From the NCBI GenBank assembly GCA_965235115.1, contig OZ249442.1, positions 11,284,001 through 11,348,000 of the forward strand: a stretch of DNA of 64,000 nt, given 5' to 3'. The position numbers and the translations under genes are program-made. This stretch comes from Laetmonice hystrix (taxonomy: Eukaryota). The stretch's first letter is position 1. Each line of letters starts with the position of its first letter. The notes beneath the pieces were generated by a model, which made no database searches, was not told where the DNA came from, and saw only the letters and a list, made by a program, of their open reading frames with translations. Shown piece by piece: positions 1,884 through 27,589 of this stretch.

Positions 1884-3048
1884 CAAGAACGTAAGTTTTG
1901 GTGATTGACAGTGTAAGTACTACACGTTGGTTCTTTCGAATAGAGCATTCTTACACTGTCATCTATGTTTCACTGGACGAATGGGACATGAATGGATTGC
2001 CCCTCAGACAGAAATGCAATAAAAGTGCAATATTGGGTATACTAACGCTATATGCTCCAGAAGCGGGTAGTTTGAATATTGTAAGACCCGGATTGCGACA
2101 GTGAGGAAATAGCGACGCATGGCTGTTAGAAATTAGCCCTTCTGAACTGGTATACTCGGTTCAATGCGATTCGAAACAATTACTATACTTATGGAACTAT
2201 GCTTCACTTTCATGTTGTGCTGGAACTTTTCTACATAACACGGCTCTTGGTTTGGTGTTCCATAATAATTTAAAAAGAATAAATGTTGATAGGGGTTTGC
2301 GGAACAAATAGATATCTATAAAGCGAGGGTATTTCCAAGGGACTCTCCCTTTGGGACGAAGTGATTGATCTCTGCCCTGCATCCACACATGCAGCTATAT
2401 TGAGACCCCAAGTGTCCGGTTGGGTGACAGAGCTGCACCGAATTGACCCCTCAAACTCCCATCAGATTTTTCTTATAAGCAATTATAGAAGTTGTGTTGA
2501 CAAGCTCAATTGTCTGCCTTCCCGCTCTGTCCTCATTGAATGAAGCGCGGCTGCCTCAGTCTCTAAGTGTCTGAAGGACGTATTGGCATTCCGACGGCGT
2601 TCTGGCATTCCGGACGCTGCCGAGAATGTCTATGGCCCTTGCCATCTAGTTCCGGGTCTGGGTCTAAATATAGCGTGGGGACGGAAGGCGACCAGCTTCT
2701 GCGATGTTTGAGAGAAGGGTGATCAATGGTTAGAACCACCTGCACCCAACCCAATGCCGTGGCGAGTAGAAACGCGTGTACCTCCAAAAGGCGTGGGCGG
2801 CACGGCCGGTGGCAGGGGATGGCAGGGATCAGGACTGGCTGGGGGGTCGGGGGTGGGGATGGGGTGGCAAGGGGAGTGGTGACCTTAGGGTCTCAAGTCT
2901 GGATACAACTCCAATCACCTAAACTCTCCCAGAATCGTTTCTATTTCATCCGTTAAAGTGTCATTATAAACCAAGGTCCCTCTCGTCTCCCACTTCCTCC
3001 CTTCGTCCGAAGATTTCGGTAGGGGGGAGTATACAGGAACGATGTCTC

Positions 3049-3120
3049 TGGCACCGTGGGGATCCAACGGGACACGACCTGCGCTGTTCTATATACTGAC
3101 CTCATGAATAATTGATCTGG
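3049..3120 (-). repeat. Left copy of ~75-bp inverted repeat pair (partner 4745-4825)
   Basis: Reverse complement ccagatcaattattcatgaggtcagtatatagaacagcgcaggtcgtgtc...cgttggatccccacggtgcca aligns to 4745-4825 with few mismatches and one indel. Confidence 0.8.
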
Positions 3121-3624
3121 TAGCTGTAGCTCGAGGGCGAGGAACCACGCGTTTCCTTGTCGTAATTTGTATTCAACATGAGCTGGTATAAAGGAGTTCG
3201 TTTCTGATTTAACCGCATGACATTCTTGTATAGGCCCTACTTATCCATAGTTGCCAACATGTGAGAGGGACAATGCGGTAGATCTTTTTCCGGCCTGTGT
3301 AGCATGCCCGGCTGATGCCGAAGGCGCATGGGCCTGCAAGAGGGCCGGTGGCATGCTCCCCGAAAAAGTTTGAAAACTTTAAAGTGCAAAGCATGCATGC
3401 ATTCTCGTGCGATCTAAGAAGAAAATAAAGTTCTCAAAATTCAGTCAAAAAGTCAAAATTTTTAACATTTAACATTTATTTAACAAAATGGTAAAAGCGG
3501 TAGATTTTTAGTCCTCAACCCCCTTGATGCGGTAGGCGGCATGCTTATCAAAACACTAGGGGCCGACTTCTCAGACACATTTGACACCCCCAAACAATCG
3601 CCGTCCTTGTATTATAACCTTTTT

Positions 3625-4661
3625 TTCTGCAGGCAGTTGGACAGACCTTCTGCAGGCAGTTGGACAGACCTTCTGTAGGCAGTTGTACAGACCTTCTGTG
3701 GGCAGTTGGACAGACCTTCTGTAGGCTGGAGAGACCTTCTGCAGGTAGTTGGACAGACTTTCTGTAGGCAGTTGGACAGACCTTCTGTGGGCAGTTGGAC
3801 AGACCTTCTGTAGGCTGGAGAGACCTTCTGCAGGCAGTTGGACAGACCTTCTGTAGGCAGTTGGACAGACCTTCTGCAGGCAGTTGGACAGACAGACCTT
3901 CTGTAGGCAGTCGGACAGACCTTCTGTAGGCAGTCGGACAGACCTTCTGTAGGCTGGGCAGACCTTCTGTAGGCAGTTGGGCAGACCTTCTGTAGGCAGT
4001 TGGACAGACCTTCTGTGGACAGTTGGACAGACCTACTGTAGGCAGTTGGACAGACCTTCTGTAGGCAGTTGGACATACCTTCTGTAGGCAGTTGGACAGA
4101 CCTTCTGCAGGCAGTTGGACAGACAGACCTTCTGTAGGCAGTCGGACAGACCTTCTGTAGGCTGGGCAGACCTTCTGTAGGCAGTTGGGCAGACCTTCTG
4201 TAGGCAGTTGGACAGACCTTCTGTAGGCAGTTGGACAGACCTACTGTAGGCAGTTGGACAGACCTTCTGTAGGTAGTTGGACATACATTCTGTAGGCAGT
4301 TGGACAGACCTTCTGTAGGCAGTTGGACAGACCTTCTGTCGGCAGTTGGACAGACCTTCTGTAGGCAGTTGGACAGACCTTCTGTAGGCAGTTGGACAGA
4401 CCTTCTGTCGGCAGTTGGACAGACCTACTGTAGGCAGTTGGACAGACCTTCTGTCGGCAGTTGGACAGACCTTCTGTAGGCAGTTGGACAGACCTTCTGT
4501 AGGCAGTTGGACAGACCTTCTGCAGGCAGATGGACAGACCTTCTGTAGGCATTTGGACAGACAGACCTTCTGTAGGCAGTCGGACAGACCTTCTGCAGGC
4601 AGTTGGATAGACCTTCTGCAGGCAGTTGGACAGACCTTCTGTAGGCAGTTGGTCAGACCTT
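3625..4661. repeat. 23-bp minisatellite (GCAGTTGGACAGACCTTCTGTAG), ~45 copies, with higher-order block duplication
   Basis: Direct inspection; period 23 (e.g. 4321/4344). The variant order (acag insertion, tcgg, short ctggg, ttggg, cta, cata) recurs about 230 bp later. Confidence 0.97.
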
Positions 4662-4744
4662 TAGGCAAGGGGCTTCCCCAGCGACTGAGAAAACGACCCC
4701 AGGTTTGGACTTAATTTCCGGAAATCGTCCTGGAACAGCGGAAA

Positions 4745-4825
4745 CCAGATTAATTATTCATAAGGTCAGTATATGGAACAGCGCAGGCCGTGTCGGTCCC
4801 ATACCGTTGGATCAACACGGTGCCA
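4745..4825 (+). repeat. Right copy of ~75-bp inverted repeat pair (partner 3049-3120)
   Basis: ccagattaattattcataaggtcagtatatggaacagcgcaggccgtgtc...cgttggatcaacacggtgcca is the inverse of 3049-3120. Confidence 0.8.
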
Positions 4826-5714
4826 AAATGCATGATTTCGCAAAGGATTCAAGTTCATGGTAAGCTGGCCTAGGTTTACGAATACTCTGTACCGCTATCG
4901 TGTATTTGAGGTCCTGAAAGCTGCTAACTAACTCCACGTCCTCCACGCCACCTGTTAAGACATCTCTTCATGGACGCCCCTTGCTGAGGTTGTCAAACAT
5001 TGAACAGTTTTATATGATACAACAGCTGCGCTATCTCTGCGCAGTTATTGCGGTACATTCCTCAGTCCCAGCCCATGGTCAGACGAACAATGAACCATGA
5101 ACGGAGGGAAATTTTAACATTAGAAAATATCAACTTAAACACCGTTGATAAATATCAACTTAAACACCGTTGATACCCTTGGGGTTCGAACCCCACCGCC
5201 TCCGTTACGGAATCCGGATCTGAGGGTATCGAACGCCCCCTCTCTCTTTCTCTGACAAAAGCGGCTTACAAAACTCATTTATCCCCACCGGCCCCCTGAC
5301 CTTTGACCTTGAGAACAGATTTATATAGGCCTACATGTATACCTAATAGTTGATCATAGAAACCGGTCACTCCGGGGGAAATATCTTGAAGTTTGAAAAT
5401 TGCCCAAAATATACTCAATTAGAGATTATTAGGGTCATACGTAACACAATGTATGTCTTATCGGCAGTGCTGGAGGCAGGCGAACGGCCACGACCTGCCT
5501 GACAAGGCTGGCAAGTAACGCCATTCCCACGCTCCACTCGACATAACAAAATGCCGTTATTTCTTCCCTGCGTGTAGATGCGAACGACGGGAAACAACCC
5601 ACTATGCACTTTGAAAAAAAGATAGAAGGAAAAAATAGCGAAATGCCTGTAATTGTCTTGGCGGGGAGGCAAAAAGGAAAAGTTGTTGAGATCTGTTCAT
5701 TTCTCGCCCCTCAG

Positions 5715-5788
5715 AAATAAACAACCCTGTGTTGAGAACTTCCCTTCAAGGCTTGATGGCCGTCTATAATGATCTAACAATGTTGAAG
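5715..5788 (+). CDS. Possible internal coding exon of an unidentified plus-strand gene
   Basis: Good acceptor (tttctcgcccctcag) and one open frame (INNPVLRTSLQGLMAVYNDLTMLK). The donor is weak (AAG|gtgata) and no homology is recognised. Confidence 0.25.
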
Positions 5789-7169
5789 GTGATATCCTTC
5801 AGAAGTCTCATTACTGCCTGCAAAACGTCCTGATAAATAGAGGGCCTATTTTTTATGTTCTTGCATATATCTTTTCGCAGAAAAAGATGTTATAACCTCA
5901 TGACTTTTGTTTATACTTGGACCACCAACGAAGAAACCCATTCCAATACTGGAGCTACTCATTATTTATAAATTAACAGTGCTTTCCTTCATTTATATTA
6001 TATAAATAACTACATACATAAGTACAAAGGATACAAAGGGCCACTAAGCTATACTGAAGCTCATAGACAGATTTCCCCTATAGATAGGGGCCTACACGAA
6101 CATTGCCACCGAGACTTTAATTACAAAATCTCCACTACTGAATGATCCTGGCCCAATTTCTCTGATGTAGGGCTATAAAAATACGTCAATCCAACAACAT
6201 CTAGGGTAGTTTAGCTTGAGGGTTATCATGTCGGCATATATTCCTGACTAGGCTGTGCTCCCAGTCCGGTATTCCCTAGTACCAAGACGACGACACGCCC
6301 CTGGATGCGGGTCTATAAGGGACCATTTGAATGTTGTCTGCTAAGTTCATGGCGGTGACCTCGCTGAAAGTCACCAAGTCTAAGTGAACGTTTACAAAAG
6401 CATTCATTAGCAATGAATGCGTCAGAAATAAAAATATGAGTGTGAATGTTAAATGAAGGCGAGCACTTTAAAAGTTTTAACCCTCGAGGGAATGTCACTG
6501 GTACATGTTCTGGCTTTTAGTGACTGGAAACTTGTACTCAGTGCATTCTGGCCTTTGAACCTCGAACAGAAAGTGCTGGGAGGGGGAGGGATAGGGTGGA
6601 GAAGGGGAGGGAGGGGTTCTACGATCTCCCCCACCCTTCACCCTGCCCTACAGACGATAACGCCCTGAGTGGACAATCACCATCAATGCTCAAATACAAA
6701 ATGTTTAAGTTTATGTTTCGCTCATTTCATATAGTCACGGAAGGCTGGTAGTTGCCTGGGGAGGGGAAGCTTTACCAAATCCACGCTTCCAGATCGACAA
6801 CTCCCTGGCGCGTGCAAATACAATTGCACGTTTATGCATGCAAATGCCGACCGAAACGACCCACTGAGGGGGACTGGTCGTCTTTGAAACGAAGGCGTTG
6901 ACAGGTTGTGACTAACTGTAGAGAGAGGTTGGTACGACTCTACACGGCATTTATACGTCCTCCAGTCAAATGGCGCGAACGTGCACGGTGGAAGAAAACG
7001 ACAGGGTCAGAGAGTACGGGCAAGCGGCTGTCGTACCTGGGATCGGGACCCCGTCATTCAGAACTCCACCCGGCCCCCTCTGCACCCTCACCCCCTACCC
7101 CCACCCCTCACCTGGGCGGTCAACCCCGGCCAACAGACTCAATTATGGCAGCTAAAAGAAAATGGCCGG

Positions 7170-7813
7170 CTTTCTCATGGCTCATGTTTCAAGGCATGGC
7201 TGGGTTTGATGCCTTCTCATGGCTCCTGTTTCAAGGCATGGCTGTTTTTGATGCCTTTCTCATGGCTCATGTTTCAAGGCATGGCTGGTTTTGATGCCTT
7301 TCTCATGGCTCATGTTTCAAGGCATGGCTGGGTTTGATGCCTTCTCATGGCTCATGTTTCAAGGCATGGCTGGTTTTGATGCCTTTCTCATGGCTCATGT
7401 TTCAAGGCATATCTGGTTTTGATGCCTTCTCATGGCTCATGTTTCAAGGCATGGCTGGTTTTGATGCCTTTCTCATGGCTCATGTTTCAAGGCATGGCTG
7501 GTTTTGATGTCTTTCTCATGGCTCATGTTTCAAGGCATGGCTGGTTTTGATGCCTTTCTCATGGCTCATGTTTCAAGGCATAGCTGGTTTTGATGCCTTT
7601 CTCATGGCTCATGTTTCAAGGCATGGCTGGTTTTGATGCCTTCTCATGGCTCATGTTTCAAGGCATGGCTGGTTTTGATGCCTTTCTCATGGCTCATGTT
7701 TCAAGGCATGGCTGGTTTTGATGCCTTTCTTATGGCTCATGTTTCAAGGCATGGCTGGTTTTGATGCCTTTCTCATGGCTCATGTTTCAAGGCATGGCTG
7801 GTTTTGATGCCTT
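7170..7813. repeat. 42/43-bp minisatellite, ~15 copies, each with an internal hairpin
   Basis: Unit GGCTCATGTTTCAAGGCATGGCTGGTTTTGATGCCTTTCTCAT; AAGGCAT/ATGCCTT form a 7-bp inverted repeat. Confidence 0.97.
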
Positions 7814-21112: not shown

Positions 21113-21779
21113 TCAAAAGAATGTCAATTAATTAGAAACATGCAAGCAAGACTGCATAGGCTAGACTATAGTATAGGCCCTGTGATCAGCAATCATGTAC
21201 AAGGCTACACACTACGCACTCTGCTATGACTATGTCAGTGACATATAACTTAAGTTATGTGAGGCAGTAGAAAGTAGGTAACGTTTATGTAACTAATCAT
21301 CAGGACCTCAGTCATCATGTCAAAATCTAGGCCTCTGCCTCGGCCTGGTTCCACAATATTTTTTTTTTTTTTTTTTTTTTTTGATTGCTTTATTTACCCT
21401 GGCTAGACGTCAGCGTTGCCGCTGGTTTTCACAGTCAGCCAGCAAGTTGTACAGCGTCGGAGAGTTTCACAATTACAGAATTCTGTATATTTAATAAACA
21501 TTTAGAGAAAACAAGGCCCTCCCTGGGCTCTTAGTCTTTAAAAGTAATATAAACATAGATACGTATGAGAGACAGCACAAATGAGTTAAGTTACCAACGT
21601 AAGAAACTCAGTTGTGAGTTATTATAGTACATACCGTGCAATATATCACAGTACAGTCGTAAACTCTGGGCCATACACATGCTCATGCACATTTTAGCTG
21701 CTATCTCAAGACGCTATCATACAATTGGAGCGACATAAGTGTTACACAGGGCCGAACAATGCACACCGCAATGGTAAGT

Positions 21780-24662
21780 TCATTCATCAACTGGGAAAAG
21801 GGTTGAGCTCAGCATACAGTTCTTCTGATAGTACTTAAACTGGTTGTATGTTGGGATGTTTCGTATGCTTACAGTTAGGTCATTCCAGGCTATGGCACCT
21901 CTATATAGCGGGTTTCTCTTAAATTTTTCCAGTTTAGGTTGCGGGACCTTAAACACTAGGGCCTCATGAGTTCTGGTAGTAATGTTTCGGGTATCAACAA
22001 TATCTAGTGAGTTTTGTTGCTTGTACATAAAGTTTCTGAGGTGTGCCAGCCTTCGTGGGACTAATTTTGCAGTGTTACACCTTCGATGTAAGTCGATGGT
22101 TGAAATATAACCCATTTCATTAATACAGATTCTGAGACCGCGGTTCTGTAGAGTTTGGAGCTTTTTCATATCCGACTGGTTACCACCATCATATATAATG
22201 TCCCCATAATCCAGGATGGGAAGAATCATAGTTTTATATATCGCTAAGCTCGCTTGGAATGTAATAAGCCCCCTTATCTTAGCTAATATATAAGTTTTGT
22301 GTGCAACTAGTCGGTGACAGTTGTCAATATGCTTGTTGAAGGTTAATTGAGCATCCAGAGTAATTCCTAAATATTTATAGCAGTATGTCCGTTCAATATT
22401 CCTGTTATTAAACACCAGGTTATGGTTCTTGATCTTTTTGGTTTGTGATTTTAACCCATATAGTACATATTTAGTCTTTTTAGGGTTGATAGTCAGCTTA
22501 TTACTCACAGCCCATTCAGCTAAGCCAGTCAAGTCATCTTGGATATGCCTGGTGACATCAGCGATGGCTCTGCCAGACTTAAAGACTACGGTATCATCTG
22601 CATGGAGTTGGATGTTTGAAAAACGTATGGCAGTAAACATATCATTTACATAAACTAGGAAGAGTAGAGGGCCCAGAACCGATCCTTGCGGTACTCCACA
22701 GACTATTTCCTTTTTCTCTGAGAGAGCATTGTTGCATGATGTGCGTTGGGAACGGTTGGTGAGATAATCAGTGAACCATTGTTGCGATAGACCTTTGACT
22801 CCTAAAAAATCTAATTTTTTTAAGAGAATCGAGTGATTAACCGTATCAAAAGCTTTTGATAGGTCTATGAAAGTGGCAATCGTGACTTCTCCGTCATTCA
22901 GTGCTTTAAAAAGTTTATCAACAAGGTTTACCACTGCGCCAGTGGTAGAGTGGTTCGGACGGAATCCACTTTGTCGCTCGTCTAGCAGGTTATTTTCTTC
23001 GAGATGGTTGCGAAGTCTGTTACCTACCACCTTCTCCATTAGTTTCCCTGGGATGGGGAGGAGTGAGACCGGTCTTAGGTTTGAAACGTCGGCTTTGTTA
23101 CCCTCTTTTTGAAGAGGAATAATGGTAGCACACTTCCAGTCTTGAGGAAAAATCCCGGTCGTGAATGATAGGTTAAACAGACGAGCTATCTTATCGGGGA
23201 CAGCAAGGAATGCATCCTTTAAAACCTTACTAGAAATGGTATGAACTGACGACGCTTTGTAGATATTTATTTGTTTTGTCAGGCTAATGACTTCGTCAAT
23301 GGTTGTCAGGATGTCACCCATTCTGTGGTCACATTTTGTACCCTTGTACTCCCATCTGGTATTGTGCTGCCTCGCAAGTTTAGGTCCAATATTAACAAAG
23401 AAGTTATTTACATAATCTGCAGTGCGATGTTCTTCAACAATGTTATCTGTTTCTGCATCAGTAAGATTAAAGGTAATCGCTTGCGATTTATTATTGGGTA
23501 GCACTTGTTTAATTGTTTGCCAGAATTTCTTGCTGTTGTCACTATTAGCTTCGAGATTGTCTTTAATAAAATCAGACTTGGCCCTACGTACTCTACCCAG
23601 TGTAAGGTTCCTTAAGGTTCTAGCTATTTCACGGTCTTCCGGGTTCTTAGTGCGCCGAGCCCGTTTCAGGGCATAGTCCTTGTCTTTAATAAGCTCGAGT
23701 AGCTCAGGGTTAATCCAAGGGTCCTTTTCTTGTTTGATTTTAAACATTTTTAATGGGCACATCTTGTCAATTATCTCCTTAATACTACTAAGGAGAATAT
23801 TCCAGGCTCTATCTGGGTGTGTTGCGGCATCGAATCCCTGCCAATCAATGTCCCTAAGGCGATCTTTAAAATCCGTAGCGTTATATTGCCTGTAGGATCT
23901 CCCGGTAAAGGACACTTTCTTTTTAACAGATACTCCTTTCTTCCTCGTCACGTAAACCATAATGTGATCACTAATGTTACAGTCCACTAGTCCTGAGTTA
24001 GCAATAAATTCCGAGTTGGTCAGGATCAGGTCCAGGCAGCTACATCTCCTATCAGATAATCTAGTAGGTTCGGTAATCAGTTGACGTAGGCCATTAGATC
24101 TGATCAGGTTAGATAACAATTTTGTGTTTTCATTTTTTTTATCGAGGTAGTCAATGTTAAAGTCGCCCAAGACGAAGACGTCTTGCCTAGTTAGACTGAC
24201 TTCTGATAAGGCGGCGCCAATACTTTCTATAAAAGATTTGGGATTACCTTGGGGAGGTCTGTACACTGTGGCGACTATAATTTTTCGTTGGTTTATCGGC
24301 TTAAGCGTTATCCATTGGATCTCGATATTTGAGTTACTGAGGTTAAGATTGCATAGGTCGGTTTCCGAGAAGGGAATCCCTGATCTAATAAAAGTCGCAA
24401 CGCCCCCTCCTTTTTTGGGGCTGGAGCCATGGTTTCCTTGAGAGTTCCAGGTTCTATCGGATCTAGTTAGGTTAAAGCCGGGGATGGAAATCATATTATC
24501 AGATAGTTGAGTGCTAAGCCAGGTTTCCGAGATAGATAGAACGTCAAGTCTCGAGTTAGCCATATAGTTTTTGAGAAGGTCTACCTTCCTGAAGATGCTC
24601 CTAGTGTTCAGATGTGCTAAGTGTAGGCCCTTACGACTAGTTACCAATGTTAGGTCTTCCAT
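21780..24662 (-). CDS. LINE ORF2: APE endonuclease + reverse transcriptase, 960 aa
   Basis: APE motifs HLNTRS, ISETWL, VYRPP, LGDFNID, LDLIL, ISDH. RT motifs LRPVSLL, QSGFR, FIDLSKAFD, GVPQGSVLGP, HADD, YKYLGI. No stops or frameshifts. Confidence 0.97.
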   Translation of the reverse strand: MEDLTLVTSRKGLHLAHLNTRSIFRKVDLLKNYMANSRLDVLSISETWLSTQLSDNMISIPGFNLTRSDRTWNSQGNHGSSPKKGGGVATFIRSGIPFSETDLCNLNLSNSNIEIQWITLKPINQRKIIVATVYRPPQGNPKSFIESIGAALSEVSLTRQDVFVLGDFNIDYLDKKNENTKLLSNLIRSNGLRQLITEPTRLSDRRCSCLDLILTNSEFIANSGLVDCNISDHIMVYVTRKKGVSVKKKVSFTGRSYRQYNATDFKDRLRDIDWQGFDAATHPDRAWNILLSSIKEIIDKMCPLKMFKIKQEKDPWINPELLELIKDKDYALKRARRTKNPEDREIARTLRNLTLGRVRRAKSDFIKDNLEANSDNSKKFWQTIKQVLPNNKSQAITFNLTDAETDNIVEEHRTADYVNNFFVNIGPKLARQHNTRWEYKGTKCDHRMGDILTTIDEVISLTKQINIYKASSVHTISSKVLKDAFLAVPDKIARLFNLSFTTGIFPQDWKCATIIPLQKEGNKADVSNLRPVSLLPIPGKLMEKVVGNRLRNHLEENNLLDERQSGFRPNHSTTGAVVNLVDKLFKALNDGEVTIATFIDLSKAFDTVNHSILLKKLDFLGVKGLSQQWFTDYLTNRSQRTSCNNALSEKKEIVCGVPQGSVLGPLLFLVYVNDMFTAIRFSNIQLHADDTVVFKSGRAIADVTRHIQDDLTGLAEWAVSNKLTINPKKTKYVLYGLKSQTKKIKNHNLVFNNRNIERTYCYKYLGITLDAQLTFNKHIDNCHRLVAHKTYILAKIRGLITFQASLAIYKTMILPILDYGDIIYDGGNQSDMKKLQTLQNRGLRICINEMGYISTIDLHRRCNTAKLVPRRLAHLRNFMYKQQNSLDIVDTRNITTRTHEALVFKVPQPKLEKFKRNPLYRGAIAWNDLTVSIRNIPTYNQFKYYQKNCMLSSTLFPVDE

Positions 24663-25046
24663 GTGAGAGTGAATTCAGCATAGCATGTTCTACGTACGTT
24701 TAACGCTATCTTCATCGTATCCCAAATATAAGTACATAAACTGATGTTGTGATGACCTTGGTGTATGCATATGTTGCTACCAGGGTCATAAACAGCAGAC
24801 TGAGTCATGAGAGAGTCGTAATACCTTAGTGGCCGACTACACATGGGTGGAAGCCAGCCCCTCCGTTTGAAAACCTATCAGCAGCATTATACATATTTAT
24901 CTACAAGCCTCGTGCGTCATATAGCAGTGAACAATATTAAGCTATTTACACGCCTTCATTAGTTGGATACGTTCTCAACATCCTACAATTGGGGTCGGTA
25001 TCCTCCTTGGGACACATTCCAGATAGATACATGCATTTCGCCCGGG

Positions 25047-26130
25047 CCACCTTCTCCAGTGAGATCGGTGATTCAGGCTTGGTGAGGTCTTAGACAAGCT
25101 ATACACACTATACAGGGGATTGAGTTTGTCTAACAGCAAAATACTCCCATTCCCGCCATTGTACCACCTTCTGCAGTGAGATCGATGGTTCAATCTTGAG
25201 GGGATCCCAATATGATTTGATTCGACAAACAATGTATAATTAAACACACACATTCCCGGTAATTGGGCCACCTTCTGCAGTGAGATCGGTGGTTCCAACT
25301 TGAGGGAATCCTAACACAGTATACCTCGGCAAACAATGTATATACAAGTACACCCATTCCCCGTCAGTGTACCACCTTCTGCAGTGAGATCGATGGTTCA
25401 ATCTTGAGGGGATCCCAATATGATTTGATTCAACAAACAATGTATAATTAAACACACACATTCCCGGTAATTGGGCCACCTTCTGCAGTGAGATCGGTGG
25501 TTCCAACTTGAGGGAATCCTAACACAGTATACCTCGGCAAACAATGTATATACAAGTACACCCATTCCCCGTCAGTGTACCACCTTCTGCAGTGAGATCG
25601 ATGGTTCAATCTTGAGGGGATCCCAATATGATTTGATTCAACAAACAATGTATAATTAAACACACACATTCCCGGTAATTGGGCCACCTTCTGCAGTGAG
25701 ATCGGTGGTTCCAACTTGAGGGAATCCTAACACAGTATACCTCGGCAAACAATGTATATACAAGTACACCCATTCCCCGTCAGTGTACCACCTTCTGCAG
25801 TGAGATCGATGGTTCAATCTTGAGGGGATCCCAATATGATTTGATTCAACAAACAATGTATAATTAAACACACACATTCCCGGTAATTGGGCCACCTTCT
25901 GCAGTGAGATCGGTGGTTCCAACTTGAGGGAATCCTAACACAGTATACCTCGGCAAACAATGTATATACAAGTACACCCATTCCCCGTCAGTGTACCACC
26001 TTCTGCAGTGAGATCGATGGTTCAATCTTGGGGGGATCCCAATATGATTTGATTCAACAAACAATGTATAATTAAACACACCCATTCCCCGTCAGTGTAC
26101 CACCTTCTACAGTGAGATCGATGGTTTTGA
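25047..26130. repeat. 104-bp-period array (208-bp A/B dimer) with 11 conserved ~28-nt cores, inside the LINE between ORF1 and ORF2
   Basis: Core CCACCTTCTGCAGTGAGATCG(A/G)TGGTTC starts at 25047, 25164, 25268, 25372, 25476, 25580, 25684, 25788, 25892, 25996 and 26100. Confidence 0.95.
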
Positions 26131-26212
26131 CATGAGGGAATCTTGACATGAAGTATCAGAGTGAACATCACCTAATACATGCGTAAGTCTACGTGGCATC
26201 GGAATGACTAGG

Positions 26213-26674
26213 CTAATTTACCAGATTAGACAGGAAGGACTTCATGAAGAGATGGGCCCATAAACCTAGCGTTTGTTCAGAGGGATGGAGCCCATCAGCG
26301 AGACGGTTGTACTTATGGCAGAGCCTATGATGTATTATAGCATGGACCGTGGTTTGCAACCAGGGACTTCGAACATTGCTATCACGGTTCATAAGGTTAA
26401 TGGCATGGTTAACGTGAGGCAAGGACTGGTCGATAATATGTTGCCCAAAGGTTTGGGAGTTGCTTTGTTTGTTATATACATCTAGGTTGATACCCACAAG
26501 CTGGCAAATCACAACATTCTTAGCAAAGGGAGATAAATCAGATCGGGCATTTTCGAAGTAATCAGTCATCGTGTCTACAAGATTGGAAATGTCATCAAAC
26601 GCGGCCGTTACTATGCCTGAGCGATGTTTCACAGATAGGTGGTTTACACCTCCAAACAGGTAAATATAGTCAAG
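26213..26674 (-). pseudogene. LINE ORF1 C-terminal part, SGNH/GDSL esterase-like
   Basis: The open frame extends upstream of the listed ORF: LDYIYLFGGVNHLSVK...ADGLHPS...LWA. GxN and DxxH blocks match the esterase ORF1 known from CR1-like LINEs. An in-frame TGA lies immediately upstream. Confidence 0.7.
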
Positions 26675-27589
26675 TCAATATGTATACAGATGGCCACAGA
26701 CTTCAACGTGTTCAAGGTCTGTGGCATGTGAGTATGGCCATGCATGATCAGTGACAACAGCACCAGCCTTTACCTCAGCCTCAGCTCAGGTCAGGCACCC
26801 TGTGGTCTGTCACTTCCTTGACTTGAGTTGGTCTGAGTCGACACCCGGGCCAGGATAGGACAGGGATGTTTTTGGCAATTTGGGAGGTGTATGGACCAGG
26901 GTTAGGGATAAGGTGAGGACTATGGATCTTTACTTCCAACCACATTTCATGGGGTGTAAGTTAACACGAGCGAATGTACCAGAGGCACAAGTCAGAACCA
27001 CCTGTGACCATACATGCACGGTCTATTCTTTACTCCCTTTTAGTTTTAGTTACAATACAACTTACAAGCCTACGTTATACTTCACTCGTTACTTGCGATT
27101 TTTTTGTGTCGTGTGGTACCGTCCCCAGGCTGGGGCAGTTACTCAATATGCATAGATTTCAATATCATGTTCATACCCAGTCTCATAGTCAACATGGTCA
27201 ATAGACCAATGCTCCAATGGGGAATTAAAAAAAACCAGGTCACTGTTTAAACTTGTTTCTCACCCTCTCGCCCTCCACAGCTCCCTGGCTCCGTGGTTCT
27301 CCAGCCGAGCACTATTTTGTCAACACACTCGTGCTTTCCGGCATGTCGCGAAGCACGCACCTGTTGTAGATCTGTGTCGTAAAGGCTGTCAGTGCTCGAG
27401 TTCTGTCAATCGATACCTCTCCTGAGCTGAGTCCTTATACGTACAATGATACCAAAGGATGCGGGCCAAAAACAACAAAGGAGGTTGGCGTTGGTAAGGC
27501 AAGTCAAGTAGAACTGCCGCTGCCTTCGGACTGTCAAGCAAGTGTAGTTCCCGACCCGCGGGGTCACGGCCTAATTATCACACCTGGGC

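What the first reader, a model, noticed from the sequence alone, without database searches (positions are those of the whole stretch)
24663..26674. LINE carrying an ordered core-and-spacer array between an esterase-like ORF1 and an intact APE-RT ORF2
Seen: 11 near-identical ~28-nt cores (minus-strand reading GAACCA(T/C)CGATCTCACTGCAGAAGGTGG). Ten are spaced exactly 104 bp apart and separated by two strictly alternating ~76-nt sequences A and B that are only partly related to each other. The first interval (117 bp) is unique, and the last A unit ends with the B-type tail, like a recombinant. The array lies in the ~1.55-kb gap between the ORF1 stop (26213) and ORF2 start (24662), so a full-length element transcript would contain it. 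Established: tandem monomers act as promoters in the 5' UTR of mouse L1, and CR1-like LINEs can carry an SGNH-esterase ORF1. I do not know of a core-conserved array between ORF1 and ORF2. Inference: the core is far better conserved than the spacers, which suggests a constrained protein-binding or RNA-structure module, such as an internal ORF2 promoter, a translation-reinitiation element or a processing site. The alternative is a satellite born inside a LINE and spread by it.
Basis: partly seen in the sequence, partly recalled or inferred. Interest (0 to 1): 0.72.

Follow-up and report, generated by a model that had tools for sequence, protein, structure and literature searches.

The report
Hairpin-centred tandem repeat inside a LINE
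A young jumping gene (a LINE retrotransposon, probably in a mollusc genome) carries a 1.1-kb block of 104-bp repeats between two of its genes; every copy spanning that region has it and it occurs nowhere else in the genome, but nothing yet shows that it does a job.

Summary
The window has 11 cores; ten lie exactly 104 bp apart (nine such intervals) and one interval is 117 bp. Two spacer types alternate, and the array fills much of a 1,550-nt gap upstream of an intact APE-RT ORF2.

Three corrections:
- The array is a 208-bp dimeric higher-order repeat (A+B; dimers 97-99% alike, A vs B 75%). The 11 cores therefore amount to about two independent monomers plus decayed edge units.
- The window copy is 5'-truncated. 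Full-length copies (~7.1 kb, poly(A)-tailed) have a separate ORF1 (coiled coil + NADAR), then an SGNH-esterase ORF, then the array, then ORF2.
- The core is the apex of an imperfect hairpin that spans each monomer junction.

Genome-wide, all 77 cores lie in eight copies of this one family (0 in the control). All seven copies that span the region carry the array, with 6-16 cores and a varying A/B order. It is therefore neither a one-off expansion nor a free satellite.

Evidence for constraint is weak:
- A/B conservation clusters at the core (P≈0.03).
- Recent substitutions hit the core as often as the spacer.
- Covariation is marginal, and Rfam finds nothing.
- No RNA data exist.

Best reading: a LINE-borne minisatellite whose palindromic junction drives expansion and contraction. 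The closest analogue is the palindrome-bearing core repeats of bivalve MITEs. A cis-RNA or promoter role remains open.

The parts
21360..26675 (-). 5'-truncated copy (5.3 kb) of a young poly(A)-tailed LINE family. Its 5' end lies inside the esterase-like ORF.
   Evidence: blastn against six other copies: homology 21360/21371 to 26675 at 95.9-99.9% identity, with unrelated flanks. Other copies continue upstream of 26675.
21360..21779 (-). 3' UTR with AATAAA and a 24-nt poly(A) tail at the low-coordinate end
   Evidence: All copies end ...AATAAAGCAATC(A)n, with n = 11-24 and different downstream flanks.
21780..24662 (-). ORF2, 960 aa, intact: APE endonuclease plus reverse transcriptase. No C-terminal CCHC motif.
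   Evidence: Pfam RVT_1 1.9e-37, Exo_endo_phos 1.5e-12. No stops. No CCHC pattern.
24663..25029 (-). Unique part of the inter-ORF spacer next to the ORF2 start. It contains 16 upstream ATGs in its last 374 nt.
   Evidence: 98-100% identical in all 8 copies that reach it. ATG count.
25030..26165 (-). Tandem array of 11 cores. In element sense it runs: decayed partial unit, A/B hybrid, (A,B) x4, a 117-nt old unit, then a terminal partial unit (core only).
25459..25520 (-). Example of the B-type junction hairpin: 20 bp (ATTCCC/GGGAAT, AGTTGG/CCAATT, CCACC/GGTGG, TCT/AGA) with loop CACTGC
   Evidence: RNA fold -23.2 kcal/mol, z -2.87. The antisense strand folds about as well, z -2.65.
25355..25416 (-). 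Example of the A-type junction hairpin: the same inner stem with a U.G pair, and weaker outer stems
   Evidence: -19.1 kcal/mol, z -1.12.
26166..26212 (-). Short unique spacer between the esterase-ORF stop and the array
   Evidence: The C5 fragment matches up to window-equivalent 26134.
26213..26674 (-). 3' part (154 codons, frame open to the element's 5' end) of the SGNH/GDSL esterase-like ORF. It lacks block I with the catalytic Ser.
   Evidence: The full 240-codon ORF in L031:2177-2899 has a conserved DSRG..GVN..DGLHP pattern and an SGNH fold.

Best explanation
The array is a minisatellite (VNTR) that arose inside the long non-coding spacer between the esterase-like ORF and ORF2 of one young LINE lineage. 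It has since been copied around the genome as a passenger of retrotransposition.

The repeat unit is 104 bp. In the currently active lineage, two diverged monomers (A and B, 75% identical) were amplified together as a 208-bp higher-order unit. That explains why the window shows 'identical cores and two alternating spacers'.

Each monomer junction forms an imperfect palindrome/hairpin with the 28-nt core at its apex. I infer that this stem-loop promotes replication slippage, unequal exchange or reverse-transcriptase template switching. That would both generate the copy-number and order changes and keep the junction segment homogenised. On this reading the better-conserved core is a mechanistic by-product, not a selected protein-binding or RNA module.

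Shown: anatomy, family-wide presence, restriction to the LINE, variability, hairpin potential, and no depletion of recent substitutions in the core.

Inferred: the slippage/recombination mechanism, and the absence of a sequence-specific function.
For: Repeat structure.
- Period 208 at 97% against period 104 at 75%. A and B units within a copy are identical or differ by one base.
- Edge units are decayed (the 117-nt unit, partial units at both ends), as expected for an array homogenised in its centre.

Distribution.
- All 77 cores in the 627-Mb assembly lie in 8 loci of this family, with 0 control hits.
- The 208-bp unit finds only those loci.
- Contig depths in DNA runs of the same organism (flank about 55, dimer contig about 1,700) agree roughly with the roughly 38 dimer-equivalents (77 cores) in the assembly, so no hidden satellite is indicated.

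Variability.
- Seven of seven copies spanning the region carry it, with 6, 9, 11, 11, 11, 12 and 16 cores.
- Monomer order differs: ABAB in the three youngest and C3; AAAA'BAB in the most diverged copy (C18); AA'B trimers in C4.

Constraint tests.
- Private variants are not depleted in the core: 9 per 28 nt against 14 per 76 nt (one-sided P for depletion 0.94).
- No Rfam family. The dimer fold is not unusual (z -0.3 sense, -0.9 antisense).

Palindrome and fragility.
- A hairpin is present at every junction type.
- The three rearranged or partial copies break at or in the array. C29 starts in the last monomer, the C5 fragment ends 7 nt before the first core, and L036 has a 627-nt deletion with one end in the array.

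Precedent. The DTC84 MITE of the clam Donax trunculus has an internal array with ordered repeat variants and variable number. It also has a palindrome in a low-variability segment near the monomer junction, proposed as the hotspot for length change (PMC3879986).
Against: - Conservation between A and B is non-randomly concentrated on the core and hairpin. A 28-nt window with at most 1 difference has P 0.029. The hairpin part differs at 10 of 62 sites against 16 of 42 in the linker (Fisher 0.02).
- The old 117-nt edge unit keeps a perfect core while its spacer has decayed.
- The two variable positions in the inner stem (C/U opposite G) preserve pairing only on the sense RNA strand. Some outer-stem differences look compensatory.
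- The lineage retrotransposed recently with a 1,550-nt spacer holding 32 ATGs in front of ORF2. ORF2 must therefore be reached by something other than simple scanning, which leaves room for a function of the spacer.
- Sister families could not be read, so conservation beyond the family is unknown.
Confidence: 0.6

Rival explanations
1. The repeated hairpins are a cis-acting RNA module of the full-length LINE mRNA. They might let ribosomes reach the ORF2 start across a long, AUG-rich spacer (IRES-like entry or shunting), or provide repeated binding sites for the element's own proteins during RNP assembly.
For: - A hairpin with the core at its apex occurs at every junction type (z -2.9, -2.75, -1.8, -1.1, -0.6).
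- One-sided changes in the inner stem are G.U-compatible only in the sense strand.
- Conservation clusters on the hairpin part.
- There are 32 ATGs, with short ORFs, in the 1,550 nt before the ORF2 ATG. Even so, near-identical copies show recent activity (99.8-99.9% identity; ORF2 intact in three copies).
- Known precedents, from my own knowledge and not tested here: an IRES upstream of mouse L1 ORF2; a secondary structure needed for ORF1-ORF2 coupling in silkworm SART1.
Against: - No compensatory double changes in the inner stem, and an overall covariation score within the range of slid controls.
- RNAalifold covariation term is -0.11.
- The antisense strand folds equally well, and the whole dimer is not unusually stable.
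- Copy number ranges from 6 to 16 and monomer order varies.
- Recent substitutions hit stem positions 20 and 24 and are not depleted in the core.
- Sister families (66-68% ORF2 identity) have no such core.
Confidence: 0.22
2. The array acts at the DNA level as an internal promoter or enhancer. Each palindromic core would be a dimeric factor-binding site, analogous to the tandem promoter monomers of rodent L1, driving an ORF2-only or antisense transcript.
For: - Tandem units of about 100-200 bp, subfamily-specific and variable in number, as in the rodent L1 5' UTR (PMC2241872; perissodactyl L1s).
- The dyad-symmetric core is equally good on both strands.
- A TATA-like TATATACATTG block is conserved in both monomers.
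- One copy (C29) begins inside the last monomer.
Against: - Five of the eight array-bearing loci extend upstream of the whole esterase ORF, and the two other copies that span the array also start upstream of it. The template RNA therefore does not start in the array.
- Only one copy starts in it, which ordinary 5' truncation explains.
- No expression data of any kind.
- The factor-binding idea is inference only.
Confidence: 0.1
3. The array is a piece of an independent satellite or another mobile element that was captured by one LINE copy.
For: The monomer has no detectable similarity to the rest of the element.
Against: - The core and the dimer occur only inside this LINE family in the whole assembly.
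- The read-depth check agrees.
- A metagenome scan for the core found nothing.
- The array grades into decayed partial units on both sides, as expected for in-situ origin.
Confidence: 0.03

Closest known systems
Tandem 'core repeats' inside bivalve MITEs (DTC84 of Donax trunculus; pearl elements of Crassostrea virginica) - PMC3879986
   Same: - An array internal to a mobile element and spread by it.
- Copy number varies between copies.
- Ordered monomer variants distinguished by diagnostic changes.
- A palindrome in a low-variability segment near the monomer junction.
- Truncated or decayed edge units.
   Different: - The host element here is an autonomous LINE, not a MITE or Helentron.
- The array sits between two ORFs of a transcribed mRNA.
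- There is no flanking microsatellite.
- The unit is 104 bp rather than about 160 bp, with no sequence similarity claimed.
- Copy number here is low: 8 loci.
Promoter monomers in the 5' UTR of mouse and rat L1 (also repeats in some perissodactyl L1 5' UTRs) - PMC2241872, PMC5872511
   Same: Subfamily-specific tandem units of about 200 bp inside a LINE. They are inherited by retrotransposition and vary in number.
   Different: - Those lie upstream of ORF1 and transcription starts in them.
- Here the array lies between the second and third ORF, and copies extend upstream of it.
- Promoter activity is untested here.
VNTR region of SVA and LAVA composite retrotransposons - PMC7353768
   Same: A central variable-number tandem repeat carried through RNA-mediated transposition.
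   Different: Those are non-autonomous primate elements mobilised by L1, and their units are unrelated.
Inter-ORF regions of L1-type LINEs (58-60 nt in rat L1, PMC2241872)
   Same: A non-coding segment between the nucleic-acid-binding ORF(s) and ORF2 that ribosomes must pass.
   Different: The spacer here is 1,550 nt, about 25 times longer. It is AUG-rich and 70% of it is tandem repeat.
Esterase-bearing CR1-like LINEs (Kapitonov and Jurka 2003, cited in PMC5203782; ZfL2-1 ORF1p esterase, PDB 4c1b)
   Same: An SGNH/GDSL esterase encoded upstream of ORF2. The family profile weakly touches 4c1b (E 0.3).
   Different: The esterase here is a separate ORF after an ORF1 that ends in a NADAR domain. 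The element has AATAAA plus poly(A). Clade not established.
LINEs with a NADAR domain in ORF1 (Repbase 'Tx1' families of Crassostrea gigas, noted in PMC12477816)
   Same: ORF1 ends in a YbiA-type NADAR domain (Pfam 4e-24; PDB 8bau 6.5e-10).
   Different: That paper mentions neither an esterase ORF nor an inter-ORF array. ORF2 here has no CCHC motif.

Membership tests
APE-type LINE (non-LTR retrotransposon) | ORF2 with apurinic-type endonuclease followed by reverse transcriptase | tested here: met
   Pfam Exo_endo_phos 1.5e-12 and RVT_1 1.9e-37. Weak but best PDB matches are to L1 ORF2p and R2.
APE-type LINE (non-LTR retrotransposon) | Dispersed copies with a common 3' end, a 3' tail and variable 5' truncation | tested here: met
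   - All copies that reach the 3' end stop at AATAAAGCAATC(A)11-24.
- 5' ends lie at five different positions.
- Flanks are unrelated.
APE-type LINE (non-LTR retrotransposon) | Target-site duplications | tested here: inconclusive
   Only short, ambiguous matches: ATATTG in the window copy, and an A-rich target in L032.
CR1-like LINE with esterase ORF1 | SGNH/GDSL esterase domain encoded upstream of ORF2 | tested here: met
   - 361 relatives.
- Conserved Ser37, Asp214 and His217.
- 13 of 48 relatives hit Lipase_GDSL.
- AlphaFold2 pLDDT 91.9.
- All top Foldseek hits are GDSL/SGNH esterases.
CR1-like LINE with esterase ORF1 | The esterase is part of ORF1 | tested here: not met
   In full-length copies ORF1 (L031:723-2084) stops 92 nt before the esterase ORF (2177-2899). 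The esterase ORF is in another frame and has no ATG near its start.
CR1-like LINE with esterase ORF1 | 3' end without poly(A) (microsatellite-type tail) | tested here: not met
   AATAAA plus poly(A) in every copy that reaches the 3' end. That CR1 lacks poly(A) is from general knowledge.
CR1-like LINE with esterase ORF1 | RT phylogeny places it in the CR1 clade | not testable with these tools
   No named reference LINE sequences were available.
L1/Tx1 clade | C-terminal Cys-rich (CCHC) motif in ORF2 | tested here: not met
   A regular-expression scan of the 960-aa ORF2 finds none. That this motif is typical of L1/Tx1 is from general knowledge.
L1/Tx1 clade | NADAR-bearing ORF1, as in oyster 'Tx1' families | tested here: met
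   Pfam NADAR 4e-24. The literature note is PMC12477816. This is a resemblance, not a phylogenetic placement.
Rodent-L1-type promoter monomers | Tandem units at the 5' end, with transcripts and new copies starting within them | tested here: not met
   The array is 2.4 kb inside the element. Five of the eight array-bearing loci extend upstream of the whole esterase ORF, and two more start upstream of the array.
Rodent-L1-type promoter monomers | Promoter activity of a monomer | not testable with these tools
   No RNA runs for this organism. The runs laid were DNA contigs.
TE-internal tandem-repeat array (DTC84/pearl type) | Array internal to a mobile element, with variable number among copies and ordered variants | tested here: met
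   6-16 cores in seven copies. A/B/A' order patterns and fixed edge units.
TE-internal tandem-repeat array (DTC84/pearl type) | Palindrome in a low-variability segment near the monomer junction | tested here: met
   Hairpin centred on the core at each junction. A/B differences are 10 of 62 in the hairpin against 16 of 42 in the linker.
TE-internal tandem-repeat array (DTC84/pearl type) | Host is a non-autonomous MITE or Helentron with an adjoining microsatellite | tested here: not met
   The host is an autonomous LINE. There is no microsatellite next to the array.
Free satellite DNA | Long arrays independent of the mobile element | tested here: not met
   Core and dimer occur only in the 8 LINE loci. 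Depth is consistent with this.
Structured cis-RNA element (IRES or similar) | Conserved secondary structure supported by covariation, or a match to a known RNA family | tested here: inconclusive
   - The inner 8-bp stem is almost invariant, with two G.U-compatible one-sided changes.
- Covariation score is 0.072 against 0.063 in shuffles (30 of 500 reach it), and slid controls reach similar values.
- No Rfam match.

The most novel reading that the evidence does not exclude
The repeated junction hairpins are a functional cis module of a tricistronic LINE mRNA. For example, they could be a multi-copy ribosome-entry or shunt platform that lets ORF2 be translated across a 1.5-kb AUG-rich spacer, or a repeated docking site for the element's own ORF1/NADAR or esterase proteins. 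That would be a new solution to the ORF2-translation problem of LINEs.
Probability: 0.2. Interest if true: 0.75.

Novelty: new variant of a known kind. Interest (0 to 1): 0.4.

Why it matters
Arrays inside mobile elements are thought to be one source of satellite DNA. This case shows such an array at an early stage. It is present only in an active LINE lineage, it is being remodelled from copy to copy, and it has a palindromic junction like the one described in bivalve MITEs.

It also exposes an unusual LINE architecture. The order is ORF1 with a NADAR domain, a separate SGNH-esterase ORF, a 1.55-kb repeat-filled spacer with 32 AUGs, then ORF2. That raises a concrete, testable question: how is ORF2 translated in such an element? 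If the hairpin array turned out to be needed for that, it would be a new kind of LINE cis element. If not, it is a clean natural example of a retrotransposon carrying and seeding a minisatellite.

Tried and rejected
1. Free or captured satellite. Rejected: core and dimer occur only in the LINE family, and there are no metagenome hits.
2. One-off local expansion. Rejected: seven copies carry the array.
3. Coding repeat. Rejected: the 208-bp period is not a multiple of 3, and only 88-aa ORFs recur out of frame.
4. Known RNA family. None in Rfam at E up to 1.
5. Monomer derived from the element's own UTRs or ORFs. Only chance-level matches.
6. The spacer is an intron, with the L036 deletion as a splice product. 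Read by eye, the ends of the deletion are not GT..AG. All copies retain the spacer.
7. RNA evidence. The look-up of sequencing runs found no RNA run. The four runs laid were DNA contigs: three from the same sample, and one small run of a second organism with ORF2 at about 90-95% identity and nothing on the array. A gap in such a small run proves nothing.
8. Reading sister families. Not possible. I did not try to get those letters any other way.
   - Only coordinates could be compared. The ORF1-to-ORF2 gap is about 691-743 nt in the 68% family, with no esterase hit. It is 1116-1776 nt and length-variable in the 66% family. The esterase-to-ORF2 gap is about 835-1075 nt in distant families.
9. 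Metagenome relatives of ORF2 (80 loci at 24-40% identity). TRF found two arrays upstream of ORF2. One lies inside an ORF (L053) and one is in a decayed locus (L080). Neither is a clear inter-ORF array.
10. Clade assignment. PDB hits to L1 ORF2p and R2 are too weak to decide, and no named references were available.
Full report
**What is there**

The finding lies in a minus-strand LINE copy at window 21360-26675. Tandem Repeats Finder reports one array at 25139-26142, scored both as period 104 (9.7 copies, 75% matches) and as period 208 (4.8 copies, 97% matches). The repeat finder gives 11 core copies spaced 117 bp and then 104 bp nine times.

In element sense the monomers read core plus 76-nt spacer. 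A monomers have a T at core position 7 and B monomers a C. A and B differ at 26 of 104 positions; one difference is in the core and 25 are in the spacer.

The order in the window, in element sense, is:
- a decayed partial unit,
- an A-head/B-tail hybrid,
- four A-B dimers,
- one old 117-nt unit,
- a terminal core followed by unique sequence.

The A units are identical to each other and the B units differ by at most one base. What looks like 11 conserved cores between two spacer types is a recently amplified 208-bp dimer. The number of independent comparisons behind 'core conserved, spacer not' is close to one.

**The element**

The window copy is not full length. Five other copies continue upstream of 26675, and three of them reach a common 5' end. 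A full-length copy (L031, G000 C19) is about 7.1 kb and is laid out as follows:

| Part | Position in L031 | Notes |
|---|---|---|
| Leader | 603 to about 722 | about 120 nt |
| ORF1 | 723-2084 | 453 codons; coiled coil, then NADAR domain (Pfam 4e-24; PDB 8bau 6.5e-10) |
| Esterase-like ORF | 2177-2899 | 240 codons, a different frame, no ATG near its start |
| Inter-ORF spacer with the array | 2900-4449 | 1,550 nt; cores from 2985 to 4065 |
| ORF2 | 4450-7332 | APE + RT |
| 3' end | to about 7742 | AATAAA and poly(A) |

The second ORF is a genuine SGNH/GDSL hydrolase homologue:
- 361 relatives in the representative library.
- Conserved DSRG, GVN and DGLHP blocks, with Ser37, Asp214 and His217.
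- 13 of 48 relatives hit Pfam Lipase_GDSL.
- A confident AlphaFold2 model, pLDDT 91.9.
- The best PDB fold matches are all GDSL/SGNH esterases, 115 of them at E up to 0.001.

The window keeps only its last 154 codons, without the catalytic serine block.

ORF2 is intact (960 aa) and has no CCHC motif. The clade could not be settled. The esterase recalls CR1-like elements. The NADAR ORF1 recalls oyster families filed as Tx1 in Repbase (PMC12477816). The poly(A) tail does not fit CR1, and the missing CCHC does not fit L1/Tx1. The protein atlas puts the esterase ORF's nearest cluster mostly in Mollusca, which is only a lead to the host taxon.

**Is the array part of the family?**

Yes. The core pattern with up to 3 mismatches occurs 77 times in the 627-Mb assembly and never in the reversed control. 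All 77 lie in eight loci of this LINE family:

| Locus | Cores | Note |
|---|---|---|
| C7 (the window) | 11 | 5'-truncated in the esterase ORF |
| C19 | 11 | full length |
| C1 | 11 | 5'-truncated |
| C3 | 16 | full length |
| C18 | 9 | full length; most diverged ORF2 (91% aa) |
| C4 at 35.36 Mb | 12 | 5' end inside ORF1 |
| C4 at 33.72 Mb | 6 | 5' end inside ORF1; 627-nt deletion from inside the array into the esterase ORF |
| C29 | 1 | copy begins inside the last monomer |

The 208-bp dimer finds the same loci and nothing else.

All seven copies that contain both sides of the spacer carry the array at the same place. One further fragment on C5 has the esterase ORF and stops matching 7 nt before the first core. 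No ORF2-proximal spacer was detected on that contig near it. I could not read what follows.

Logan contigs of three DNA runs of the same sample give depth about 55 on the unique flank, 710-800 on ORF2 and about 1,700 on the dimer contig. This roughly agrees with the assembly (77 cores, about 38 dimer-equivalents) and gives no sign of a hidden satellite. The tool itself warns that contig depth is a crude measure.

None is met.

**The family is young, and the array changes within it**

The window, C19 and C1 copies are 99.8-99.9% identical over 5 kb, have intact ORF2 and share the same 11-core array. More diverged copies differ in number and order. C18 reads A A A A' B A B, one C4 copy has A-A'-B trimers, and C3 has 16 cores with two 112-nt units.

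So strict alternation belongs to the youngest subgroup and to C3. The array has been remodelled repeatedly in the active lineage or after insertion.

**Tests for constraint on the core**

- For constraint: placing the 26 A/B differences at random gives a 28-nt window with at most one difference in 2.9% of permutations. It gives an identical run of 21 or more in 3.5%.
- For constraint: the 117-nt edge unit keeps a perfect core while its spacer has decayed.
- Against constraint: among all monomers of all copies, the new variants (neither the A nor the B state) number 9 in the 28-nt core and 14 in the 76-nt spacer. The core is not depleted (one-sided P 0.94).
- Against constraint: the terminal 'eleventh core' is simply the partial last repeat that every tandem array has. 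It is not independent evidence.

**The hairpin**

Folding shows what the core is. It is the apex of an imperfect palindrome spanning each monomer junction. The inner stem is CCAYC/GGTGG plus TCT/AGA around a CACTGC loop, and the outer stems are made from the tail of one monomer and the head of the next.

| Junction (62-nt window) | Energy (kcal/mol) | z against shuffles |
|---|---|---|
| B type (20 bp) | -23.2 | -2.87 |
| 5' edge | -19.9 | -2.75 |
| 3' edge | -19.4 | -1.80 |
| A type | -19.1 | -1.12 |
| 117-nt unit | -17.1 | -0.58 |

(All values.) The antisense strand folds about as well (z -2.65 and -1.21). The whole dimer is not unusually stable (z -0.3 sense, -0.9 antisense).

A/B differences are rarer in the 62-nt hairpin part (10) than in the 42-nt linker (16; Fisher 0.02).

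On an alignment of the 28 distinct junction sequences:
- The inner stem is nearly invariant.
- Its two variable positions are C/U opposite G, which keeps pairing on the sense strand only.
- A few outer-stem pairs change on both sides.
- The covariation score is 0.072 against 0.063 in shuffles (30 of 500 reach it), and controls with slid partners reach similar values.
- RNAalifold keeps only 11 pairs, with a covariation term of -0.11.
- Rfam has no match.

The structure is real as a sequence property. It is not demonstrated as a selected RNA fold.

**Interpretation**

The closest described thing is not the mouse L1 promoter monomer. It is the 'core repeat' array inside bivalve MITEs. DTC84 of the clam Donax trunculus has an internal array of variable length and ordered repeat variants. 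It also has a palindrome in a low-variability segment near the junction with the next unit. Its authors propose the palindrome as the hotspot for length change, and they cite a stem-loop replication model for the birth of such repeats (PMC3879986).

The present array shares each of those properties but sits in an autonomous LINE, between two ORFs. All three rearranged or partial copies break at or in the array, which fits a fragile, recombinogenic palindromic repeat.

I therefore favour a passenger minisatellite whose junction palindrome drives expansion, contraction and local homogenisation (confidence about 0.6).

**Why a function is not excluded**

The spacer before ORF2 is 1,550 nt, against 58-60 nt in rat L1 (PMC2241872). 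It holds 32 ATGs (29 expected from composition) with short ORFs, four of which overlap the ORF2 start. Yet the lineage has made near-identical copies containing ORF1, the esterase ORF and the array. The transposition template is therefore the full-length RNA.

If ORF2 protein acts on the RNA that encodes it, as in other LINEs (general knowledge, not tested here), ribosomes must reach ORF2 by something other than scanning. An array of sense-strand hairpins is a candidate for that (about 0.2).

A DNA-level promoter or enhancer role like the L1 monomers is less likely (about 0.1). Five of the eight array-bearing loci extend upstream of the whole esterase ORF, and only one copy starts in the array, as ordinary 5' truncation would produce.

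**Limits**

- No RNA run exists for this organism in the index. Transcription starts, small RNAs and translation could not be examined.
I did not try to obtain those letters by other means, so the spacers of sister families could not be read. Only coordinates were compared:
  - The 68%-identity family has a 691-743-nt ORF1-ORF2 gap without an esterase hit.
  - The 66% family has gaps of 1116, about 1590 and 1776 nt in three copies. That length variation would fit arrays there too, but it is unverified.
  - Distant esterase-bearing families have 835-1075 nt between the esterase ORF and ORF2.

**Verdict**

The structural reading needs three corrections: a dimeric higher-order repeat, a truncated copy in the window, and an esterase that is a separate ORF. 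The functional inference is unproven and only weakly supported. The finding is a new variant of a known kind: a mobile-element-internal tandem array with a palindromic junction, here in the inter-ORF spacer of a three-ORF LINE. Interest is moderate (0.4).

Noticed in passing
L031:723-2899 (G000 C19); also L032 and L034: The full-length element has three ORFs: ORF1 (coiled coil plus a YbiA-type NADAR domain), a separate SGNH-esterase ORF 92 nt downstream, and ORF2. The esterase ORF is in another frame and has no ATG near its start. How it is translated is unclear. Its relatives are stand-alone proteins of about 210-220 aa that align from query residue 30 or so.
   Followed up: partly
window 26784-26950: The flank just upstream of the truncated LINE has contig depth 27,000-43,000, against about 55 on the neighbouring unique sequence in DNA runs of the same sample. 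It therefore belongs to a very abundant repeat family.
   Followed up: no
L032:220-516 (G000 C3): One full-length copy has a 137-nt segment of the 5' end present twice, 160 nt apart, at 99% identity. This is a small tandem duplication of the leader and ORF1 start.
   Followed up: no
L035:2078 and L036:1954 (both on G000 C4, 1.6 Mb apart): Two more diverged copies lose homology to the full-length element at the same position within 1 nt, inside the NADAR part of ORF1, although their upstream flanks are unrelated. An ORF1 N-terminal piece (93-95% identity) lies about 5.7 kb upstream of the L036 copy. At least that copy may therefore be interrupted rather than truncated.
   Followed up: partly
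G000 C5:36281018-36281851: A family fragment has the esterase ORF (94% aa identity, one TAA) and stops matching 7 nt before the first core. No array or ORF2-proximal spacer was detected nearby. It is either a rearranged copy or a trace of a pre-array form. It could not be read.
   Followed up: partly
G000 C4:34135657-34141622, C1:39243408-39248728, C1:22445344-22451131: Three copies of a sister family (ORF2 66% identical) have ORF1-to-ORF2 gaps of 1776, 1116 and about 1590 nt, with no esterase hit. The length variation suggests another variable repeat at the same position.
   Followed up: no
run X4 (organism B), laid on window 21398-24586: A second organism's small DNA run holds contigs about 90-95% identical to the 3' UTR and ORF2 of this family, so a close relative of the LINE exists in another species. 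Nothing was laid on the array, but the run is too small for that gap to mean anything.
   Followed up: no
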